From the IMG/VR virus record IMGVR_UViG_3300046660_000219, positions 62,001 through 126,000 of that record: a stretch of 64,000 bases of DNA, one strand, 5' to 3'. Under the pieces are notes generated by a model. The model did not search any database. It saw only the letters and a list, made by a program, of their open reading frames with translations, and was not told the DNA's origin. Shown here in pieces: positions 6,497 to 49,174 of the stretch. The first letter of the stretch is position 1. Every line of letters starts with the position of its first letter. Both the position numbers and the translations under genes were made by a program.

Positions 6497-8731
6497 ATGG
6501 CCGATAACCTTGGCGTTACGGTTGAGCGCGACGACGAGAGCGGTTTCATCACTGCTGACGGTGCTACCGTTACGGTGGTGGGCTTCTACTCGACGCGCGG
6601 TTCGACCAAGCCCTACTACACTTCCGACCCTGGCGCGTGGACCGCTGAATACGGCAACCCCGACGCTTCTATTTCTTACGCCGGTTACAGTGTGCGCAAG
6701 CCGCTAGAGCAAGGCGACGGTGTCTGGAATCTGCGCATTACGGATAGCGCTACCTATGGCGGTGCGTTCGTTACCGCTGGTACGACGTCCGTGTCTAAGC
6801 TCCCGTTCCTGGCGGCTGGTTGGCCGTACTCGATTGACGATGTTGATACGGCTATCAATCCGACCCGTCCGCTGCTTATCCAGCTCAAGTTCTCAGCGGC
6901 CCTGATTACGGCCAACTCGTTCACGTGTACCCTTGTTGGTGAGAGCGCTCAGGTGTCTACGACGCCGGTAGTATTCGCCACTGACAGCGATACGACGATG
7001 GGCGCTATCGTTGCTGCCATTCAATCGAGCATGGACGCGACGTTCGGTGCTGGCGGTACGGTTTCGGCCGGCGAAACGACGCTTATTCGTACCATTAACG
7101 TGATCCCTCCGGCCGGTAAGACGATCTCGATCACGGGTGCGGCTGTCACGCTTGGTGCTTCGCAAGCTACCGTTACTCAAGGTAGCCCGTTACTGATCTT
7201 CCAACATGCCAACCCTGGTTCGACTTCGGACGAACTCGGCTACTTTTTGTCCAACCCGGACTTGGGGCAGCGCGAAGTCGTTACCTTGACGTTCCCGTCC
7301 GCGCTTAGCACGGGACACGGTACTCTTGTTACCGTTAATGGTGCGGCTACGTCGTCGATCGTCTACGCGACGTCCAGCGATGCTACTATGCAGGCCATCG
7401 CTGACGCTGTCGCAGCGCTAGCCACGGTCAAATCGGCTACGGTTACCAAGGTAGCGTCTGGTGCAAGCAACGACCGCACCATTACCATTATCTTGAAGAC
7501 GGCTACAGCTACGGCTGCTACTGTTAGCACGACGCAAGCTGGTGGCGCTCCGGTTCCGGTGATCAAGTCCACCAAGCCCGGCGTTGATCCGGATGGTAGC
7601 TTTACGCTGGCGATTTTCGACCGCCGTAACCCGGCTGTCACGGTCGATAGCTGGCGCGTCAATCTCACCGAACGCTTGGACGGTGACGGCGTGCAACAGC
7701 ACATCGAAGAAGTGATCAATAAGGGTGATGCTAAATCGCGCCTGTTGCGGGTGATTTCGCTGGCTCCAAAGGATGGTTCGGTTCGTATTCCGTTCGATCC
7801 GGACACTGGCGTGATCATGACGCAGATTGCGTACCTTTCTGCCGGCAATAACGGTGTCATCCCTTCGGCCGCCAAAATGGCTGACGCTATGTTGGTCTTC
7901 CAAGATCCTTACCGTTATCCGGCTGATCTGATGATCAGTGCTGGTTACACGTCCATTGCCTATCAGCAAGCGTTGAAGAACATCGCTAAGCTGCGTGGTG
8001 ACGGTACGTTCGCCATCCTGGACATTCCGAGCACGCAACAGTCGTTCGACAACCTGATTAACTACCGTTTGTCCACGCTAGCTATCGACGATTCGTCGGC
8101 TGGCGCGTACTACCCCGACGTGGAAATGCAAGATCCGGTTACGCAGCGCAAGCTGTTTGTGCCGCCGTCTGGCCATATCGCGGCGGTGTTTGGTGTTAAC
8201 GACCGCGTGCGTGGCTTCGGTAAGGCTCCGGCCGGTCGTAAGGTTGGTGTGGTCGATACCACGGCGCTGCGTTATGAATATACGCAGGCGCAAGTAACGC
8301 TTCTGGCGGAGAACTACCAGCTTAATGGTATTCTCAAGAAGGGCGTTTCGTGGTGTGTGTGGGGTGATTTCACCCTACAAGTCATGAAGTCTGCGTTACA
8401 GTTTACGGGCATCAGCCGTCTGGTTGGTAAGCTTGAATTCGCCATCGCCGACATGCTTGACTTCGACACGTTCGATCCGTTCAATGACGCGCAAGCGTTC
8501 TCGATGCGTGAGAAGATCAACCGCTTCCTGGCGCCGTACATCAAATCGGAAGACCTTCGCGGTTACACGGTCAATACTGGATCTACCGCCGGCAATACGG
8601 CGGCTCTGGAGGACCAAGGCGCACGCATCGTGGAAATGAAACTCAATCCGACGCGATCGACCCGCAAGATCAAACTGCGATCGATCATTACGGCGGCTGG
8701 GGTTGAAACTACCGTTACGGAAGTCGCCTAG
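6497..8731 (+). CDS. Tail sheath protein
   Basis: 744 aa; C-terminal sheath-like motifs (YYPDV, VPPSGHIAAVF, WGDFTL, ISRL); precedes tube genes. Confidence 0.9.
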   Translation: MADNLGVTVERDDESGFITADGATVTVVGFYSTRGSTKPYYTSDPGAWTAEYGNPDASISYAGYSVRKPLEQGDGVWNLRITDSATYGGAFVTAGTTSVSKLPFLAAGWPYSIDDVDTAINPTRPLLIQLKFSAALITANSFTCTLVGESAQVSTTPVVFATDSDTTMGAIVAAIQSSMDATFGAGGTVSAGETTLIRTINVIPPAGKTISITGAAVTLGASQATVTQGSPLLIFQHANPGSTSDELGYFLSNPDLGQREVVTLTFPSALSTGHGTLVTVNGAATSSIVYATSSDATMQAIADAVAALATVKSATVTKVASGASNDRTITIILKTATATAATVSTTQAGGAPVPVIKSTKPGVDPDGSFTLAIFDRRNPAVTVDSWRVNLTERLDGDGVQQHIEEVINKGDAKSRLLRVISLAPKDGSVRIPFDPDTGVIMTQIAYLSAGNNGVIPSAAKMADAMLVFQDPYRYPADLMISAGYTSIAYQQALKNIAKLRGDGTFAILDIPSTQQSFDNLINYRLSTLAIDDSSAGAYYPDVEMQDPVTQRKLFVPPSGHIAAVFGVNDRVRGFGKAPAGRKVGVVDTTALRYEYTQAQVTLLAENYQLNGILKKGVSWCVWGDFTLQVMKSALQFTGISRLVGKLEFAIADMLDFDTFDPFNDAQAFSMREKINRFLAPYIKSEDLRGYTVNTGSTAGNTAALEDQGARIVEMKLNPTRSTRKIKLRSIITAAGVETTVTEVA

Positions 8732-8740
8732 CACCCTTGA

Positions 8741-8775
8741 GGAGCTGTTACCATTTAGGTGGTAACAGCTCCTTT
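8741..8775 (+). terminator. Rho-independent terminator
   Basis: ggagctgttacca-tttagg-tggtaacagctcc followed by ttt. Confidence 0.8.
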
Positions 8776-8805
8776 CTCCAACCTAGTTAGAAGGAGATCG
8801 TCACC

Positions 8806-44838: not shown

Positions 44839-45047
44839 TATTTACCTTTCTTATGACGATTACGGAACGCCACGCGGAAAGCCTTCCGCAGATAGGCAGC
44901 CTCACCCTCCCAGTCTACGCCGTCTTTGCGCAGACGTTTTACAGCACGATGCACGCGCTCGGTGGGTAAGTCGAAATGCACAGCAACCGCACTGATCAGG
45001 CGGCGGGGTTCTGCGATCCTGTGCGGTAGCAGTTGATAGGTGATCAT
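44838..45047 (-). CDS. Small basic protein, HTH-like
   Basis: Start MITYQ (ORF-track start 45188 runs through tRNA-Leu). Confidence 0.5.
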   Translation of the reverse strand: MITYQLLPHRIAEPRRLISAVAVHFDLPTERVHRAVKRLRKDGVDWEGEAAYLRKAFRVAFRNRHKKGK

Positions 45048-45081
45048 ACCTTTATCCCAATTTGGTGTGTGCTTAACGCAC

Positions 45082-45113
45082 GAGAGCCGAAGATCGTGGG
45101 ATCTTCGGCTCTC
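45082..45113. other. Perfect 14-bp hairpin just 3' of tRNA-Leu(TAG)
   Basis: gagagccgaagatc-gtgg-gatcttcggctctc; no U-tract. Confidence 0.7.
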
Positions 45114-45118
45114 TAGTG

Positions 45119-45202
45119 TGGTGCGGATGAGAGGACTCGAACCTCCACGTCTCTCAACATTGGTACCTAAAACCAACGCGTCTACCATTTCGCCACATCC
45201 GC
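45119..45202 (-). tRNA. trnL: tRNA-Leu(TAG)
   Basis: Cloverleaf gcggatg...catccgc-a-cca, anticodon arm ttggt-tttaggt-accaa, long variable arm. Confidence 0.92.
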
Positions 45203-45205
45203 TAG

Positions 45206-45274
45206 GATAGATACAGCCGGAAACTGAATAGCCCCACTCACCAGACGCTAGGCGACTAGCTAGCTGTACCTATC
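45206..45274 (-). ncRNA. Candidate small structured RNA between tRNAs
   Basis: 12-bp closing stem gataggtacagc/gctgtatctatc; internal gctag-tcgc-ctagc hairpin. Confidence 0.45.
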
Positions 45275-45282
45275 TTAGAGGA

Positions 45283-45315
45283 TGGTAGACCCTACTGGAC
45301 TCGAACCAGTAACCG
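45283..45315 (-). pseudogene. 3' fragment of disrupted tRNA(CAT)
   Basis: cggtt-actgg-ttcgagt-ccagt-agggtct-a-cca: variable region, T arm, acceptor 3' strand and CCA only. Confidence 0.85.
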
Positions 45316-45330
45316 GTGCAAGTCCCTCTC

Positions 45331-45894
45331 TCATCGTAATGCTTTTGGATCGAGACCATAATTACGTGCCCATTTGCGAACAGCGTTGTCACTAACTTTG
45401 TATTTACGTCCCAGTGCTGACCACGACGTAGTTCGTAGCAATCTAACCAATTCGCGCTTACTAGGACGACTAGCGCGGCGGGTGGCAAACTTGCAGCAAG
45501 CAGTAGAACAATAGTAGTCTTGCGTGATAAACAACGGGAAGTCACAGATCGCGCAGCGACGAATAGTAATCAACTTGGTTGATGAACGCTGATTACATTC
45601 AGAATTTATCAGCCGCTTGCCGCGCAAAGGTGCACCGCGATCCAACCACGCATGAATTTGCTTATGTGTAGATACACTGCACACCAGTAGGTTTTCAGGT
45701 GCGTTGTTAGCGCGTCTAAGGTCCAAATGATGCACTTCTTCTGAACGTCGCAGAGGACGTTCAATTTTACGTTCAGCTACTAACAAGTGCTCATAGACCC
45801 AACCTTTATAACCACCTTGTAGCGCGCGTGGATGGTCAGGCATAAAAACAAGTATGTAGCCCAGTTCTATTTGCTTGCGCTTAAGTTTCTTCAT
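45331..45894 (-). CDS. HNH homing endonuclease with Zn-finger and C-terminal HTH
   Basis: YEHLLVAE...EVHHLD...NNAPENL...H; CAIC...CSTAC; LGRKYKVSDNAVRKW. Confidence 0.92.
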   Translation of the reverse strand: MKKLKRKQIELGYILVFMPDHPRALQGGYKGWVYEHLLVAERKIERPLRRSEEVHHLDLRRANNAPENLLVCSVSTHKQIHAWLDRGAPLRGKRLINSECNQRSSTKLITIRRCAICDFPLFITQDYYCSTACCKFATRRASRPSKRELVRLLRTTSWSALGRKYKVSDNAVRKWARNYGLDPKALR

Positions 45895-45936
45895 AACTCG
45901 AACCTCCGTTGCTAAATAAATTAGCAGGTTCGAGTT
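45895..45936 (-). promoter_or_regulatory. RBS-sequestering hairpin containing CTAATTTAT
   Basis: aactcgaacct / aggttcgagtt stem ends at ATG and covers SD ggaggt; motif lies within the loop. Confidence 0.8.
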
Positions 45937-45939
45937 TGC

Positions 45940-46018
45940 TGGTACACCGGGTGGGATTCGAACCCACGAAATAAGTCCGTTATGAGCGGACGGCCTTAAA
46001 CCACTTGGCGACCGGTGC
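45940..46018 (-). tRNA. tRNA with CAT anticodon (probably Ile2; Met not excluded)
   Basis: gcaccgg/ccggtgt-a-cca; gtccg-ctcataa-cggac; gtggg-ttcgaat-cccac. Confidence 0.9.
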
Positions 46019-46034
46019 CTTTAGCAAGAGCTTA

Positions 46035-46075
46035 GTTATAGGAGCGATCGGCTCTAACCATTGAGCTAAGGGTCC
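46035..46075 (-). pseudogene. 5' fragment of disrupted tRNA(CAT)
   Basis: ggaccct-ta-gctc-aatggtta-gagc-c-gatcg-ctc[ct]ataac; ggaccct pairs with agggtct of the 3' fragment. Confidence 0.85.
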
Positions 46076-46099
46076 GCCTAGAGTTTGGATTTAGTTAGT

Positions 46100-46190
46100 T
46101 GGTACCGGGGAAGGGACTCGAACCCTCAAGGCCATTACTAGCCCAACGGTTTTTAAGACCGTCGCGTATCACCATTTCCGCCACCCCGGC
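46100..46190 (-). tRNA. trnL: tRNA-Leu(TAA)
   Basis: gccgggg/ccccggt-a-cca; acggt-cttaaaa-accgt; long variable arm. Confidence 0.92.
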
Positions 46191-46204
46191 ACATTACTAA
46201 CACA

Positions 46205-46406
46205 CCCCAAAGCTTCCGAAAGATACACAAAACGTCCAGCCGGTGCAGCGACTCTCGCCCTTTTAATCGGGCTCTCAGAATCATCTACACCTTAAGATCA
46301 TTCCATCTAAAACTGTACGCACACCTTTCAACTCACTTATTTAGCGCGAGTGTTAATAGGTGTCAGGCCGCGTATCCTGTTTGTGTACCTGTCGCAAACT
46401 TTGGCC
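46205..46406 (-). ncRNA. Candidate ~200-nt structured ncRNA
   Basis: 5'/3' end pairing ccaaagttt/aagctttgg and aggtacacaaa/tttgtgtatct, plus internal stems. Confidence 0.55.
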
Positions 46407-46422
46407 TTTAAAGTAGGTGGCG

Positions 46423-46496
46423 CGAACCCTGTTGGATTTGAACCAACAACCCCGCACTTAGAAGGCGCGTGCTCTATCCTGGTGAGCTAAGGGTTC
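46423..46496 (-). tRNA. trnR: tRNA-Arg(TCT)
   Basis: gaaccct/agggttc; cgcgc-cttctaa-gtgcg; followed by cgcca rather than cca. Confidence 0.9.
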
Positions 46497-46503
46497 TCAC
46501 CTT

Positions 46504-46680
46504 GTATGTGCGAGCCGCCGAACACTCTGGGCGGTGGGGTGCTTTGAGTGTTCGGCTAGCTCTAACCGCCTTACATAAACACAGGCAGGCGGCTTTTCGG
46601 AGGCAATGCCTCTCATCAAAACGGCGTTTAGGCGGGTGCTCATACCGTTTCGAAGATCACCCGGTATTCGCCGTGAGCTT
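46504..46680. ncRNA. Candidate pseudoknotted RNA(s) between terminase and tRNA cluster
   Basis: 11-bp stem gccgaacactc/gagtgttcggc with loop ggcggt complementary to accgcc; further stems acggcg/cgccgt and ataccg/cggtat. Confidence 0.5.
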
Positions 46681-46753
46681 GCAACACGACTACTGAGCGG
46701 GTGAGCCCGTAGAATAAGCACCATAGACAAACAAGTCAAGATCCCTGTCTAGA

Positions 46754-49174
46754 CTAGGCCGCCGCACGACGAACCATGCCTAGAGACCCGCCGCCCTGGC
46801 TGGACGAGGAAGAGCCACCAGTGCCGTATGAGCGCTTCGCACCCATGGCATTACTGACTACGCCAGTGCTACCTTCGCGCCCTCTAGCGACTACACCTAG
46901 GATAGCTCTACGTGTTCCTTGTGAGTACGTCGCGAAGTGTTCGGCAAGTTCCGGGTCCGTAGTGATGTGCCAACCAAGAACGATAGCGCGGAACAAATCA
47001 TCAGTTGCGCCTTCTGGCTTGCTTACCGTTACGCCGGGCAAGTCCTGCACACCGACAAGCTGATAAAGCAAGTGCGCAATCGGCTTGCCAGCAAAAGGTA
47101 TAGGATAGCCCGGTTGTCGCGCCAGTCGCATCGCTTCTTTGGGCTTCACCTCAAGCGCGGGTAGGCGCATGAAGTTGTCGTAGATCGCTGACTGTCGAAA
47201 TTGTTCAAACTCCGGATATTTCAACGAATGGGTAAGAGGTGTGATACCTTCCTCTTCTTCCATTTGTTGTAATAGTTGGATCGATTGCCAACGGTCGGCG
47301 CACAACACAGAGGCGCTGTAGTGTTGGATTAGTGGCTGTACGACGTTGCGGATAATCGACGGGAAGTGGGCCGGAGCATCTTTCGACAAGATCAACTCGG
47401 CGGCGAACCGCACACGCGCTTTGTTACCTTTTTCACCACACTTCTCGACGACAGCCACCGCGAAGCTGTTGTTCACAGAGCCCGCGTCGATGAACACACC
47501 ACAGGGTCCACCGTTGTACTCGCGATGGAACTTTACCTTTCCGGTGGTTTGTAACCCGCCCGATTTGTTTTTGAACACGCGGGTTTCTAGTGTCGCGTCG
47601 TTACCGGTTTTGCCATGGAAAGTGTTCTTGAGCGCTGACAGCATCAGGAATGGCGAACCAGACACCGGCGGAATGGCTGCGTAGTCGCGTGCAGCGGTAA
47701 CTGGGTTCTTGCGGTAGGCTTCGACGATGATCGGGCTGTCTCGCGAAATAGTAGGATTGATCTCCCACGTAGCCGCACGGTAACCGTACATGGTCTTGGA
47801 GCCACGCGATTGCTCGTGCAGCTTCATGATCATATCTTTTTGCGACGCCGGGCTCGAAATATTGTAGAAGTAGCCCATTGGGATGTTATTGTTCCCGGCG
47901 ATCAAGGCCTTGTACGCCGCGTCACGTACCGTGGTTAGTGAGCGCTCTAGCGAGATGTACACTTCTTCCGCATCCATGCGGTCGTAAGCCTTACCGCCTT
48001 TGGTTAGGCCCATGTTCATGTGGCCGATTTCGTCCACCGCCGCCGAGACACGCGTACGACCACGTGACGTCTTCTTGTTAGGTCCGCTAGGTGTGTACAG
48101 AAGGTTGCGGTGACGGTACCGCAAATAGGTATCTTTGAGATTGTACAGCTCGACGCCAATTCGTCTACCGGTCTGGTCCAACATCGCGTGGTACTGTTGA
48201 AACCACGGGAAGTCATTCAGCATATTGGTAAGCGGGTCCCAGAGGTTTTCTTTGGCCTGGGCGAACGTTAGAGCGACAAAGGTAGCTTGTAGTTGTTGTG
48301 ACCCGGCGATGTTAAACATCGCTTGCGGGTTCTGCGACTTGAGCAGGCGGTGCAAGTCGTATGTGACTTGCAGCATGACTTGGAAGGTCTTCGACGCCCG
48401 CTGGCCCGCCAGACCAGCCAGTTCATTGTATGGATTGAACGTCTCTTCCGCGACTAGTTCTGACTTCGTCGTGTGACAACGCGGGCAGACGCCAAACTCC
48501 AAAAAGGTAACGCGATCTTGAAAGTCTTCAATGCTTGCGTCAACCGGAACATTGGCCCACCATTTGCGATCGGTGCACTTTGGGTTAGGGCACCATTCGT
48601 TGAACAGTCGCGTCGGGTGTTCGATCTGCTTAGCCCACGGCGTGAATGACGGCGTGCGCGCGAACGCCGTATCAGTCACCCACGTGAAATAGTTAGGCGC
48701 AGTAGGAATGTCGCGATCGTCAATGCGCGAGTCTTGCGCAACGACACCTGACGATTGCAGCACTTGCTCGATCATTCGCTCAAGCGCACGCTCCTTGGAG
48801 CGTGCCTGTCCCGGTGTCCACTCCATACCCTTTCGCATGAGCATATCAGTGGCGACAGGTTTAGTGCGGGGCGGTACGTCGTGCCCGAAGCTTTCAACCT
48901 CCGTAACAGTAAGCAATCGCTTGGAGTAACTGGTGCACAGATAGTTGTAGTTCTTGGCCGGATCTAGACACTGCGAGAACTTACTACAGCCCATGCACGA
49001 GTTGTGTTTACTGGCAACCAGTCTTTGGCCTAGCTTACCTTTTTCTACCTTAGATTGTACCTCGGGCTCGTGTTTCGGCGCGGGGCGCACAGGCCGCACA
49101 GGCTTAGTCATTTTTGGCGCAGGCTTACTAGACTTGAGCGTCGGGCGTTTCTTTACAGAGAACAGCGAAGCCAT
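46754..49174 (-). CDS. terL: Terminase large subunit
   Basis: AGQRASKT Walker A, AAVDEIGH Walker B, ISSP, nuclease FIDAG...ADRWQ...TDDL. Confidence 0.9.
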   Translation of the reverse strand: MASLFSVKKRPTLKSSKPAPKMTKPVRPVRPAPKHEPEVQSKVEKGKLGQRLVASKHNSCMGCSKFSQCLDPAKNYNYLCTSYSKRLLTVTEVESFGHDVPPRTKPVATDMLMRKGMEWTPGQARSKERALERMIEQVLQSSGVVAQDSRIDDRDIPTAPNYFTWVTDTAFARTPSFTPWAKQIEHPTRLFNEWCPNPKCTDRKWWANVPVDASIEDFQDRVTFLEFGVCPRCHTTKSELVAEETFNPYNELAGLAGQRASKTFQVMLQVTYDLHRLLKSQNPQAMFNIAGSQQLQATFVALTFAQAKENLWDPLTNMLNDFPWFQQYHAMLDQTGRRIGVELYNLKDTYLRYRHRNLLYTPSGPNKKTSRGRTRVSAAVDEIGHMNMGLTKGGKAYDRMDAEEVYISLERSLTTVRDAAYKALIAGNNNIPMGYFYNISSPASQKDMIMKLHEQSRGSKTMYGYRAATWEINPTISRDSPIIVEAYRKNPVTAARDYAAIPPVSGSPFLMLSALKNTFHGKTGNDATLETRVFKNKSGGLQTTGKVKFHREYNGGPCGVFIDAGSVNNSFAVAVVEKCGEKGNKARVRFAAELILSKDAPAHFPSIIRNVVQPLIQHYSASVLCADRWQSIQLLQQMEEEEGITPLTHSLKYPEFEQFRQSAIYDNFMRLPALEVKPKEAMRLARQPGYPIPFAGKPIAHLLYQLVGVQDLPGVTVSKPEGATDDLFRAIVLGWHITTDPELAEHFATYSQGTRRAILGVVARGREGSTGVVSNAMGAKRSYGTGGSSSSSQGGGSLGMVRRAAA

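What the first reader, a model, noticed from the sequence alone, without database searches (positions are those of the whole stretch)
46205..46406. About 200-nt closed-end structured RNA between tRNA-Arg and tRNA-Leu
The 5' and 3' ends pair through two consecutive helices (9 and 11 bp), with inner stems cggcc/ggctg, acacc/ggtgt, actc/gagt and gccc/gggc; there is no credible ORF. The position implies release by tRNA processing. It could be a 6S-like RNA polymerase decoy, a protein sponge or a new phage ncRNA class (inference).
Basis: partly seen in the sequence, partly recalled or inferred. Interest (0 to 1): 0.65.

Follow-up and report, generated by a model that had tools for sequence, protein, structure and literature searches.

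The report
Conserved structured RNA beside phage tRNAs
A roughly 200-nucleotide RNA gene, a tightly paired stem closing a four-armed fold, lies between two tRNA genes of an uncultured soil jumbo phage. One related phage keeps it with compensating base changes, it matches no described RNA family, and its job is still unknown.

Summary
Window 46404..46207, on the minus strand like all four tRNAs, folds into a 9+3+11 bp closing rod and a four-way junction. The 231-nt spacer gives -87.3 kcal/mol, z = -5.4; the opposite strand gives z = -2.2. Rfam 15 finds nothing, even at E <= 10.

One homolog exists, in a related metagenomic phage (TerL 57% identical), directly after a tRNA-Lys. A covariance model built from the window copy alone scores it 67 bits on the sense strand and 26 on the antisense. 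On the structure-fitted alignment 96% of cells pair. Twelve pairs change on both sides and nine on one side; slid controls give 32-43% paired.

The rod is almost invariant, with conserved G.G and Y.U mismatches. Its core motif recurs in two further closed-end hairpins that also sit next to tRNAs, and nowhere else in the 206-kb genome.

It is single-copy, has no conserved ORF, and is not 6S, Y RNA, tmRNA, pRNA, ROOL or GOLLD.

My reading is a new phage tRNA-island structured RNA, analogous to but not homologous with T4 RNAC/RNAD. It would be excised with the tRNAs, with the rod serving as a processing or protein-docking module.

The limits are two sequences, no RNA data and an unknown function.

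The parts
46754..49174 (-). Terminase large subunit gene, immediately upstream of the tRNA/ncRNA island
   Evidence: PHROG 17415, E = 1e-160. Homologs carry PF27249.
46711..46739 (-). Promoter-like site (TTGACT, 17-nt spacer, TATTCT) that could start the island transcript
   Evidence: It matches 9 of 12 positions and is no more than chance would give (1 found, 1.7 expected), so it is weak evidence.
46422..46496 (-). tRNA-Arg(tct), 18 nt upstream of the element (counted from the discriminator base at 46423)
   Evidence: ARAGORN; Rfam tRNA 60.6 bits.
46207..46404 (-). The structured RNA itself, 198 nt: a closing rod and a four-way junction
   Evidence: Fold, z = -5.4. Models R1 and R2. Homology to L003 8884-9059 starts and ends exactly at the ends of the rod.
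46380..46404 (-). 5' strand of the rod: P1 (9 nt), unpaired G, 3-bp block, unpaired C, P2 (11 nt)
   Evidence: It differs from the homolog at four positions. Three of them (columns 7, 8, 17) switch between Watson-Crick and G.U pairs. The fourth is the unpaired C/U, which stays a pyrimidine-U mismatch.
46364..46379 (-). P3 hairpin: CAGG/CCUG stem, 8-nt loop holding the palindrome CGCG
   Evidence: The stem is invariant. The homolog's loop holds GCGCGC.
46321..46363 (-). P4 hairpin; the loop motif CUAAAUA is shared with the homolog
   Evidence: Three pairs change on both sides in the outer stem.
46232..46320 (-). P5 arm: basal helix, small hairpin P5a (46295-46308), long hairpin P5b-d (46242-46291) tipped by GCCC/GGGC
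   Evidence: Five of the nine basal pairs change on both sides, and none of the nine is invariant.
46207..46231 (-). 3' strand of the rod
   Evidence: It differs from the homolog at one of 25 positions.
46100..46190 (-). tRNA-Leu(taa), 16 nt downstream. Its 5' end is the expected RNase P site that would set the element's 3' end.
   Evidence: ARAGORN; Rfam 53.4 bits. RNase P cleavage is inferred, not shown.
45197..45285 (-). Second, smaller closed-end hairpin ('C') with the same rod core (AGGUACA/UGUAUCU), abutting the 5' end of tRNA-Leu(tag)
   Evidence: This and the finding are the only two places in the 205,908-bp genome with this paired core; shuffled genomes give about 0.1.
45331..45894 (-). 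Free-standing HNH homing-endonuclease gene inside the island
   Evidence: PHROG 15471, E = 4e-24. A syntenic 187-aa HNH_3 gene lies in L003.

Best explanation
This is a real, single-copy gene for a structured non-coding RNA of about 180-200 nt, and it belongs to no described family. It sits in a small tRNA/ncRNA island inserted just downstream of the terminase gene of an uncultured rhizosphere jumbo phage.

Shown: the RNA fold is under selection on the tRNA-sense strand. The fold is a 23-25 bp rod that is almost invariant in sequence and carries two conserved mismatches. The rod closes a four-way junction of P3, P4 and a branched P5, whose helices have diverged through compensatory changes.

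Inferred: the RNA is co-transcribed with the tRNAs and cut out of the precursor by the tRNA-processing machinery. RNase P would cut at the 5' end of tRNA-Leu, and endo- and exonucleases would act behind tRNA-Arg. Host RNase III may also cut in the rod, which is two helical turns long. The paired ends would then protect the RNA from exonucleases, so that it accumulates like the T4 RNAs RNAC and RNAD.

Also inferred: the invariant rod, with its G.G and Y.U mismatches and its GRUACA/UGUAYC core, is a docking or cleavage site for one specific protein. The same core recurs in other closed-end hairpins next to tRNAs. The conserved junction would be the working part that acts in trans. The GC-palindromic P3 loop may allow it to pair with a second copy of itself. 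The partner and the biological role are unknown.
For: Thermodynamics and strand: z = -5.4 on the sense strand against -2.2 on the antisense.

Homolog: L003 8884-9059 was found by blastn (E = 3e-6). Model R1, built from the window copy alone, scores it 67.3 bits (E about 5e-15) on the sense strand and 25.8 bits on the antisense. A fold of the homolog constrained to the same P3 and P4 costs only 0.1 kcal/mol more than its own minimum.

Covariation: on alignment A6 there are 73 pairs and 96.3% of cells pair. Twelve pairs change on both sides and nine on one side. Sliding the partners by 1-3 columns gives 32-43% paired and 0-3 two-sided changes. None of 500 column shuffles reaches the observed values. 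The structure-blind MAFFT plus RNAalifold run already recovers the rod, the P5 base and the P5 tip, with four two-sided changes.

Rod: all three pair changes in the rod are Watson-Crick to G.U switches that are legal only on the sense strand.

Boundaries: similarity starts and stops exactly at the rod ends, while the neighbouring tRNAs differ, Arg here and Lys there.

Not coding: no conserved ORF, and the alignment carries frame-breaking indels.

Shared rod module: the core motif with at least 8 further outward pairs occurs only at the finding and at hairpin C in the 206-kb genome, against about 0.1 in shuffles. In L003 it occurs at the homolog and at RNA A. A's rod aligns in the same 9-1-3-1-11 register, at 21 bits. 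All four modules lie 0-18 nt from a tRNA.

Precedent: T4 places rnaD and rnaC directly after tRNA-Arg in a tRNA cluster that also holds a homing endonuclease. These RNAs are expressed, and their roles are unknown (PMC3014915, PMC9697503).
Against: Only two sequences exist, so no R-scape-type statistic is possible. Alignment A6 was fitted to a structure derived from one of the two, which inflates the share of paired cells.

No RNA evidence exists. The only run that holds the sequence is the DNA source run. Expression, ends and stability are all unverified.

In L003 no tRNA follows the element. There the first three rod nucleotides are the CCA of tRNA-Lys. One transcript therefore cannot yield both a mature tRNA ending in its encoded CCA and an intact rod.

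No candidate partner protein was found. The genome has no RNase III, dsRBD or Ro60/TROVE gene. The visible part of L003 shares no island-specific protein with the window phage.

The promoter-like site is within chance expectation.
Confidence: 0.55

Rival explanations
1. A purely cis-acting processing and stabilising module. The rod is a host RNase III or RNase E substrate that separates tRNAs from the terminase and HNH messages. After RNase P cuts at the next tRNA, the rod is left as a protective 3' hairpin on the upstream RNA. The interior is a structured spacer with no function in trans.
For: Rods of 23-25 bp with central mismatches lie 0-18 nt from tRNAs in all four cases, and three of the four lie directly upstream of a tRNA 5' end. 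Their contents range from about 40 to about 150 nt. From general knowledge: RNase III needs about two helical turns of double-stranded RNA, and it excises rRNAs from stems formed by their flanks.
Against: The interior of the finding keeps the same four-way architecture through 12 two-sided changes, which a mere spacer would not need. The rod sequence is conserved far beyond what RNase III requires: five differences in 50 nt, between phages whose terminases are only 57% identical.
Confidence: 0.2
2. A self-assembling RNA. It would be a small counterpart of ROOL/GOLLD, or a packaging RNA like phi29 pRNA, that pairs with itself through its palindromic P3 loop. Given its place beside the terminase gene, it might act at the packaging motor.
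For: The P3 loop holds a GC-only palindrome in both homologs, although the loops differ: CGCG here, GCGCGC there. ROOL and GOLLD are phage RNAs often found near tRNA islands, and they form RNA-only cages through kissing loops, some of them self-interacting (bioRxiv 10.1101/2024.12.08.627333). Paired 5' and 3' ends with a central junction also resemble the outline of pRNA (general knowledge).
Against: No Rfam match to pRNA, ROOL or GOLLD. I found no conserved complementarity between two different loops. Linkage to the terminase gene is shared ancestry in two related phages, not independent evidence. More distant relatives place protein genes directly after the terminase gene and lack the RNA. 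The phage has an ordinary large terminase.
Confidence: 0.08
3. A DNA-level element: a miniature inverted-repeat transposon, an attC-like recombination hairpin, or a pair of inverted protein-binding sites.
For: The arms are imperfect inverted repeats, about 90% conserved, while the interior is much less conserved in sequence. The boundaries are sharp and the neighbouring tRNAs differ between the two phages. Related rods occur nearby.
Against: It is single-copy in the genome and shows no target-site duplication. The differences in the arms keep pairing only through G.U on one strand. The interior is multi-branched, with 12 compensatory changes. Among the four rods the inner part is the most conserved, not the termini. 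The genome has no tyrosine recombinase.
Confidence: 0.05
4. A 6S-like decoy of RNA polymerase, or a CsrB-type protein sponge.
For: Its size of about 200 nt and its paired ends resemble 6S RNA.
Against: No 6S, Y-RNA or Csr/Rsm model matches, even at E <= 10. The centre is a four-way junction rather than an open bubble. There are no repeated GGA-loop motifs (my own count).
Confidence: 0.03
5. A chance fold in a spacer that has no function.
For: Only two sequences exist and there are no expression data.
Against: z = -5.4. The model hit to the homolog has E about 5e-15. The pairs covary. The rod is under strong purifying selection.
Confidence: 0.03

Closest known systems
Phage T4 small stable RNAs RNAC (species 1) and RNAD (species 2)
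   Same: They are encoded on the tRNA strand inside a phage tRNA cluster, directly after tRNA-Arg, and the cluster also holds a free-standing homing endonuclease. They are non-coding and their function is still unknown (PMC3014915). They are expressed late in infection (PMC9697503).
   Different: There is no sequence or structure homology: model R1 gives nothing below E = 0.1 on the T4 region. T4 rnaC is 139 nt and carries a tRNA-like T-arm. The element here has no T-loop and a different architecture of rod plus four-way junction.
ROOL and GOLLD RNAs
   Same: They are structured RNAs of unknown function in phages and prophages, often beside tRNA islands (PMC5737381). They assemble with themselves through kissing loops, and the palindromic P3 loop here hints at the same.
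   Different: They are 581 nt and more than 800 nt long, with many junctions and pseudoknots. No Rfam match was found here. This RNA is 176-198 nt, with no predicted pseudoknot.
RNase III stems that excise rRNAs, and 3' ends defined by RNase P as in MALAT1/mascRNA (general knowledge)
   Same: A long helix formed by the two flanks of a structured RNA inside a polycistronic precursor. A downstream tRNA supplies an RNase P cut that would define the 3' end.
   Different: This is an analogy of mechanism only. Cleavage was not tested here, and the rod is conserved in sequence far beyond what RNase III needs.
6S RNA
   Same: Length of about 200 nt, paired 5' and 3' ends, not translated.
   Different: No model match. 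There is no central open-promoter-like bubble; the centre is fully helical and branched.
phi29-family packaging RNA (pRNA)
   Same: Paired ends form a bulged helix that closes a multi-helix junction. The gene lies in a phage and, in this case, next to the packaging ATPase gene.
   Different: No match to the Rfam pRNA model. No conserved complementarity between two different loops was found. The phage has a conventional large terminase and is a jumbo phage, not a phi29-like podovirus.
Bacterial Y RNAs (YrlA) with Ro60/Rsr
   Same: Paired ends form a conserved bulged stem that docks a protein, with a structured module beyond it.
   Different: No Rfam match. The phage has no TROVE/Ro60 gene. There is no tRNA-like T-loop module in the interior.

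Membership tests
6S RNA | Match to the Rfam 6S covariance models | tested here: not met
   cmscan of the window at the gathering scores, and of 44900-47000 at E <= 10, returns only tRNAs and noise.
6S RNA | Large central bubble flanked by long irregular helices | tested here: not met
   The centre is a four-way junction of P3, P4 and P5.
6S RNA | Binds the sigma-70 RNA polymerase holoenzyme and templates product RNA | not testable with these tools
   This needs biochemistry.
T4 RNAC/RNAD-type stable RNAs of phage tRNA clusters | Encoded inside a phage tRNA cluster on the tRNA strand, next to a tRNA | tested here: met
T4 RNAC/RNAD-type stable RNAs of phage tRNA clusters | Sequence or structure homology to rnaC or rnaD | tested here: not met
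   Model R1 with filters off on the T4 region: best E = 0.16, and not at rnaC or rnaD. The folds differ.
T4 RNAC/RNAD-type stable RNAs of phage tRNA clusters | Accumulates as a discrete stable RNA during infection | not testable with these tools
   No RNA run holds the sequence.
ROOL / GOLLD | Match to the Rfam models; length over 500 nt with many junctions and pseudoknots | tested here: not met
   The element is 198 nt.
ROOL / GOLLD | Located in phages or prophages near tRNA islands | tested here: met
   literature read.
ROOL / GOLLD | Homo-oligomeric assembly through kissing loops | not testable with these tools
   The only hint is a GC palindrome in the P3 loop of both homologs.
Y RNA / YrlA | Rfam match, a Ro60 (TROVE) gene nearby, and a tRNA-like module | tested here: not met
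   No match. PF05731 is absent from the whole phage genome while the control genomes ring. No T-loop motif in the sequence.
phi29 pRNA | Rfam match, and two loops complementary to each other for ring formation | tested here: not met
   No match. By inspection of the loops in the folds, no complementarity between two different loops is conserved.
tmRNA | tRNA-like ends plus a tag reading frame | tested here: not met
   ARAGORN and Rfam find none in the window or in the whole genome. The relative L003 does carry one, elsewhere in its island.
Miniature inverted-repeat transposable element | Several dispersed copies, target-site duplication, strand-symmetric terminal repeats | tested here: not met
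   Single copy. No duplication at the ends. Pairing is kept through G.U on one strand only.

The most novel reading that the evidence does not exclude
The RNA founds a new class of phage ribonucleoprotein or self-assembling RNAs. Its sequence-invariant rod, a motif shared by several closed-end modules in the tRNA island, would dock a specific phage or host protein. The GC-palindromic P3 loop would join two or more copies. The result would be a small relative, in principle, of ROOL/GOLLD cages or of a packaging RNA acting beside the terminase.
Probability: 0.1. Interest if true: 0.8.

Novelty: new variant of a known kind. Interest (0 to 1): 0.5.

Why it matters
Phage tRNA islands are known to hide structured RNAs whose roles are still open. 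T4 RNAC and RNAD have had no assigned function for decades, and ROOL and GOLLD were only recently shown to build RNA cages.

This element is a compact new example of 176-198 nt. It has unusually clean boundaries and a rod conserved at the sequence level that is reused by neighbouring hairpins. That points to one specific recognition event, a cleavage or a docking, which can be tested with simple assays.

If the rod proves to be a portable excision-and-stabilisation module, it would explain how such islands turn one transcript into several stable RNAs. It could also serve as an expression scaffold.

With only two members and no RNA data, it remains a well-supported candidate and not an established class.

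Tried and rejected
Rfam. Searches at the gathering scores and at E <= 10 gave only tRNAs.

GenBank phages. Blastn with 901 nt, and with each element alone at E <= 5, gave only tRNA matches and one chance 25-mer.

Exact-pattern scans with the conserved arms:
- IMG/VR, five patterns: nothing, or chance hits that the model rejects.
- JGI metagenomes, two patterns: nothing.
- GTDB genomes, two patterns: two hits. Both lie in continuous sequence with no Rfam match, which I read by eye as the inside of a sugar-isomerase-type gene, and they score only about 12 bits. I rejected them as chance.

Contigs reached through proteins:
- Terminase relatives were fetched. Only L003 has the RNA. L002, at 62% terminase identity, ends 229 nt after the terminase gene. 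The 47-52% relatives have protein genes there.
- Relatives of the HNH gene were fetched. None has the RNA.
- A search with the C-terminal 250 aa of the terminase, meant to catch short contigs, found nothing.

Whole-record model searches of ten IMG/VR relatives found nothing. Records behind Logan, ENA and NCBI loci could not be searched.

Expression. The only run holding the sequence is the DNA source run. Laying it confirmed the assembly only.

Partner proteins. TROVE, RNase III, dsRBD and tyrosine recombinase are all absent from the phage genome. The L003 island proteins of 206 aa and 50 aa have no counterpart in the window phage.

T4 rnaC and rnaD are not homologous.

Coding reading. Both copies are open across the 3' strand of the rod in the same frame, giving LCIFRKLW here and LCIFRRLW there. 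The flanking residues, the starts and the ends are unrelated, and the ORFs run into tRNA or spacer sequence. I rejected this reading.

Full report
Context. The window is bases 62001-126000 of a 205,908-bp IMG/VR virus record. It is a jumbo phage whose only public source run is a rhizosphere metagenome. The record's 127-bp terminal repeat looks like an assembler overlap. The whole genome has four tRNA genes, all in one minus-strand cluster.

In the direction of transcription the locus reads as follows.
- Terminase large subunit, 49174..46754.
- A 257-nt leader with a weak promoter-like site.
- tRNA-Arg(tct), 46496..46422.
- The finding.
- tRNA-Leu(taa), 46190..46100.
- An 81-nt remnant of a tRNA 5' half.
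- tRNA-Met, 46018..45940.
- An HNH homing-endonuclease gene, 45894..45331.
- tRNA-Leu(tag), 45202..45119.

Terminase relatives at 47-52% identity have protein genes directly after the terminase gene and no such island. The island is therefore an insertion in this lineage.

The observation. Read on the tRNA strand, the 231-nt spacer folds at -87.3 kcal/mol (z = -5.4; none of 200 dinucleotide shuffles does as well). The opposite strand reaches only -55.7 kcal/mol (z = -2.2).

The 198-nt core, 46404..46207, has these parts.
- P1, 9 bp, followed by a G.G mismatch.
- A 3-bp block, followed by a C.U mismatch.
- P2, 11 bp.
- A four-way junction carrying P3, P4 and P5.
- P3 is a CAGG/CCUG stem with an 8-nt loop.
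- P4 is a 15-bp interrupted hairpin.
- P5 is a branched arm with a 4-bp hairpin and a long hairpin tipped by GCCC/GGGC.

The stem cggcc/ggctg is not. No ORF is credible. A second assembly of the source run gives the identical sequence.

Known families. Rfam 15 reports only the four tRNAs at the gathering scores. At E <= 10 on 2.1 kb around the element it adds only noise. ARAGORN finds no tmRNA. The element is therefore none of the following, as far as the models can see: 6S, Y RNA/YrlA, tmRNA, RNase P RNA, pRNA, ROOL, GOLLD, drum, skipping-rope, a known ribozyme or a known riboswitch.

A homolog. Through terminase homologs I fetched neighbouring DNA from metagenomic contigs. One of them, L003 (a Logan contig; terminase 57% identical), has the same layout: terminase gene, an ORF-poor island of about 2.8 kb, an HNH gene, then the start of a tRNA-Leu.

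Blastn aligns window 46404..46207 to L003 8884-9059 (E = 3e-6). Similarity begins and ends exactly at the rod ends. The flanks are unrelated, and the upstream tRNA is Lys there rather than Arg.

Model R1, built from the window copy alone with its minimum-energy structure, scores the L003 copy 67.3 bits (E about 5e-15) on the sense strand and 25.8 bits on the antisense. Folding the L003 copy with the homologous P3 and P4 enforced costs only 0.1 kcal/mol over its own minimum.

Covariation. On the structure-fitted alignment A6, 73 pairs are defined and 96.3% of cells pair. Twelve pairs change on both sides and nine on one side. Five L003 cells are unpaired. Sliding the 3' partners by 1-3 columns drops pairing to 32-43%, with 0-3 two-sided changes. 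None of 500 column shuffles reaches the observed values.

The base of P5 has five two-sided changes in nine pairs and no invariant pair. The outer part of P4 has three. The structure-blind MAFFT plus RNAalifold run already recovers the rod, the P5 base and the P5 tip, with four two-sided changes.

There are caveats. Only two sequences exist, and A6 is fitted to a structure derived from one of them. The numbers show consistency, not a formal test.

The rod. The two rods differ at only five of 50 positions, although the terminase proteins are 57% identical. Three of the differences are Watson-Crick to G.U switches that are legal only on the sense strand. The fourth is the unpaired C/U, which stays a pyrimidine-U mismatch. 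The fifth is the partner of one of the switches. The G.G mismatch is kept in both copies.

This pattern argues for selection on an RNA helix with a sequence-specific reader. It argues against selection on two DNA half-sites.

A search of the whole 206-kb genome for the core G[GA]UACA...UGUA[CU]C with at least 8 further outward pairs finds two places: the finding and a smaller closed-end hairpin, C, at 45285..45197. C abuts the 5' end of tRNA-Leu(tag). Twenty shuffled genomes give about 0.1 such places.

L003 also has two: the homolog, and a 155-nt closed-end RNA, A, at about 8649-8803, which lies 10 nt upstream of tRNA-Lys. A folds with z = -7.5. Its rod aligns to model R2 in the same 9-1-3-1-11 register at 21 bits.

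All four rod modules lie 0-18 nt from a tRNA. The rod is thus a reused module with variable contents. Only the contents of the finding are known to be conserved between the two phages.

What it is not.
- It is single-copy, has no target-site duplication, and the genome has no tyrosine recombinase. A MITE-like or attC-like DNA element is therefore unlikely.
- The genome has no Ro60/TROVE, RNase III or dsRBD gene. Any RNase III would have to be the host's.
- There is no open central bubble and no repeated GGA loops, so neither the 6S-like nor the sponge reading has support.

Mechanism. The following are inferences.
- The RNA is made as part of the tRNA precursor.
- RNase P cutting at tRNA-Leu leaves a 16-nt tail that exonucleases trim back to the rod.
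- Nucleases behind tRNA-Arg define the 5' side.
- The rod, two helical turns long, may also be a host RNase III site.
- The closed ends then stabilise the RNA.
- The invariant rod and its mismatches are the most likely protein-recognition site.
- The conserved junction is the working part.

The P3 loop carries a GC-only palindrome in both copies, CGCG here and GCGCGC there. This would allow a kissing dimer. ROOL and GOLLD, phage RNAs often near tRNA islands, assemble through kissing loops.

One observation complicates simple release by tRNA processing. In L003 the first three rod nucleotides are the CCA of tRNA-Lys, and no tRNA follows the element.

Comparison with what is known. The closest analogue in kind is T4. 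There rnaD and rnaC follow tRNA-Arg in a tRNA cluster that also holds the segB homing endonuclease. Both RNAs are expressed and still have no assigned function. They are not homologs of this element: model R1 finds nothing, and rnaC has a tRNA-like T-arm that this RNA lacks. ROOL and GOLLD share the genomic niche but are three to four times larger.

Verdict. This is a real, conserved, strand-specific structured RNA gene from no described family. It is a new variant of the known kind 'stable structured RNA embedded in a phage tRNA island'.

I put about 0.85 on it being a selected RNA structure. I put about 0.55 on the full explanation, that it is excised with the tRNAs and acts in trans with the rod as a docking or processing site. 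Function and partner remain unknown.

Noticed in passing
L003 8649-8803 (+): A second closed-end structured RNA, 155 nt, in the related phage. A long rod closes three hairpins. It folds at -72 kcal/mol with z = -7.5 (173-nt stretch) and lies 10 nt upstream of tRNA-Lys. Its rod matches model R2 in the same register (21 bits) and shares the GGUACAC/GUGUACC core. No counterpart was found in the window phage.
   Followed up: partly
window 45197-45285 (-): A smaller closed-end hairpin between the HNH gene and tRNA-Leu(tag). Its 13-bp inner helix shares the AGGUACA/UGUAUCU core of the finding. Its outermost pairs would use the first bases of the tRNA.
   Followed up: partly
window 46019-46099 (-): The spacer between tRNA-Leu(taa) and tRNA-Met holds a truncated tRNA: an acceptor 5' strand and a D-arm, most like tRNA-Arg, with no 3' half. 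This is a trace of rearrangement in the island.
   Followed up: partly
window 45082-45113 (-): A perfect 14-bp GC-rich hairpin directly after tRNA-Leu(tag), with no U tract (region z = -5.8). It could be the end of the island transcript or another processing site.
   Followed up: no
window 45897-45934 (-): A hairpin of about -20 kcal/mol pairs the GGAGG ribosome-binding site of the HNH endonuclease gene. This suggests translational restraint of the homing endonuclease.
   Followed up: no
window 46497-46753 (-): The 257-nt leader between the terminase gene and tRNA-Arg is itself structured (z = -3.4). It has an 11-bp hairpin just before the tRNA and a promoter-like site at 46739..46711. It shows no similarity to the corresponding regions of L002 or L003.
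   Followed up: partly
L003 10688-11101 (+): The related phage carries a complete alphaproteobacterial-type (permuted, two-piece) tmRNA gene: Rfam alpha_tmRNA 157 bits, with a tag peptide that ends in AVAA. This points to an alphaproteobacterial host. The window phage has none.
   Followed up: partly
L003 9060-10687 (+): About 1.6 kb has no called gene, no ORF over 86 aa and no Rfam match. Several 150-nt windows fold with z about -3. More unrecognised RNAs may lie here.
   Followed up: no
L020 1008-1670; L021 and L022 about 318-981: Soil-metagenome contigs with the closest HNH homolog (63% identical) have an ORF-free gap of about 660 nt upstream of it. The gap holds no tRNA and no match to the element's model.
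   Followed up: no
window 46754-49174 (-) and its relatives: The terminase has a long Cys-rich N-terminal extension (PF27249; invariant Cys at positions 63, 69, 80, 195, 200, 230, 233 in alignment A5). Several relatives carry inteins with LAGLIDADG domains in the terminase or in the DnaB helicase.
   Followed up: no
G000, both ends: The 'direct terminal repeat' of the record is exactly 127 bp. That is typical of an assembler k-mer overlap on a circular or circularly permuted assembly, not of true terminal redundancy.
   Followed up: partly
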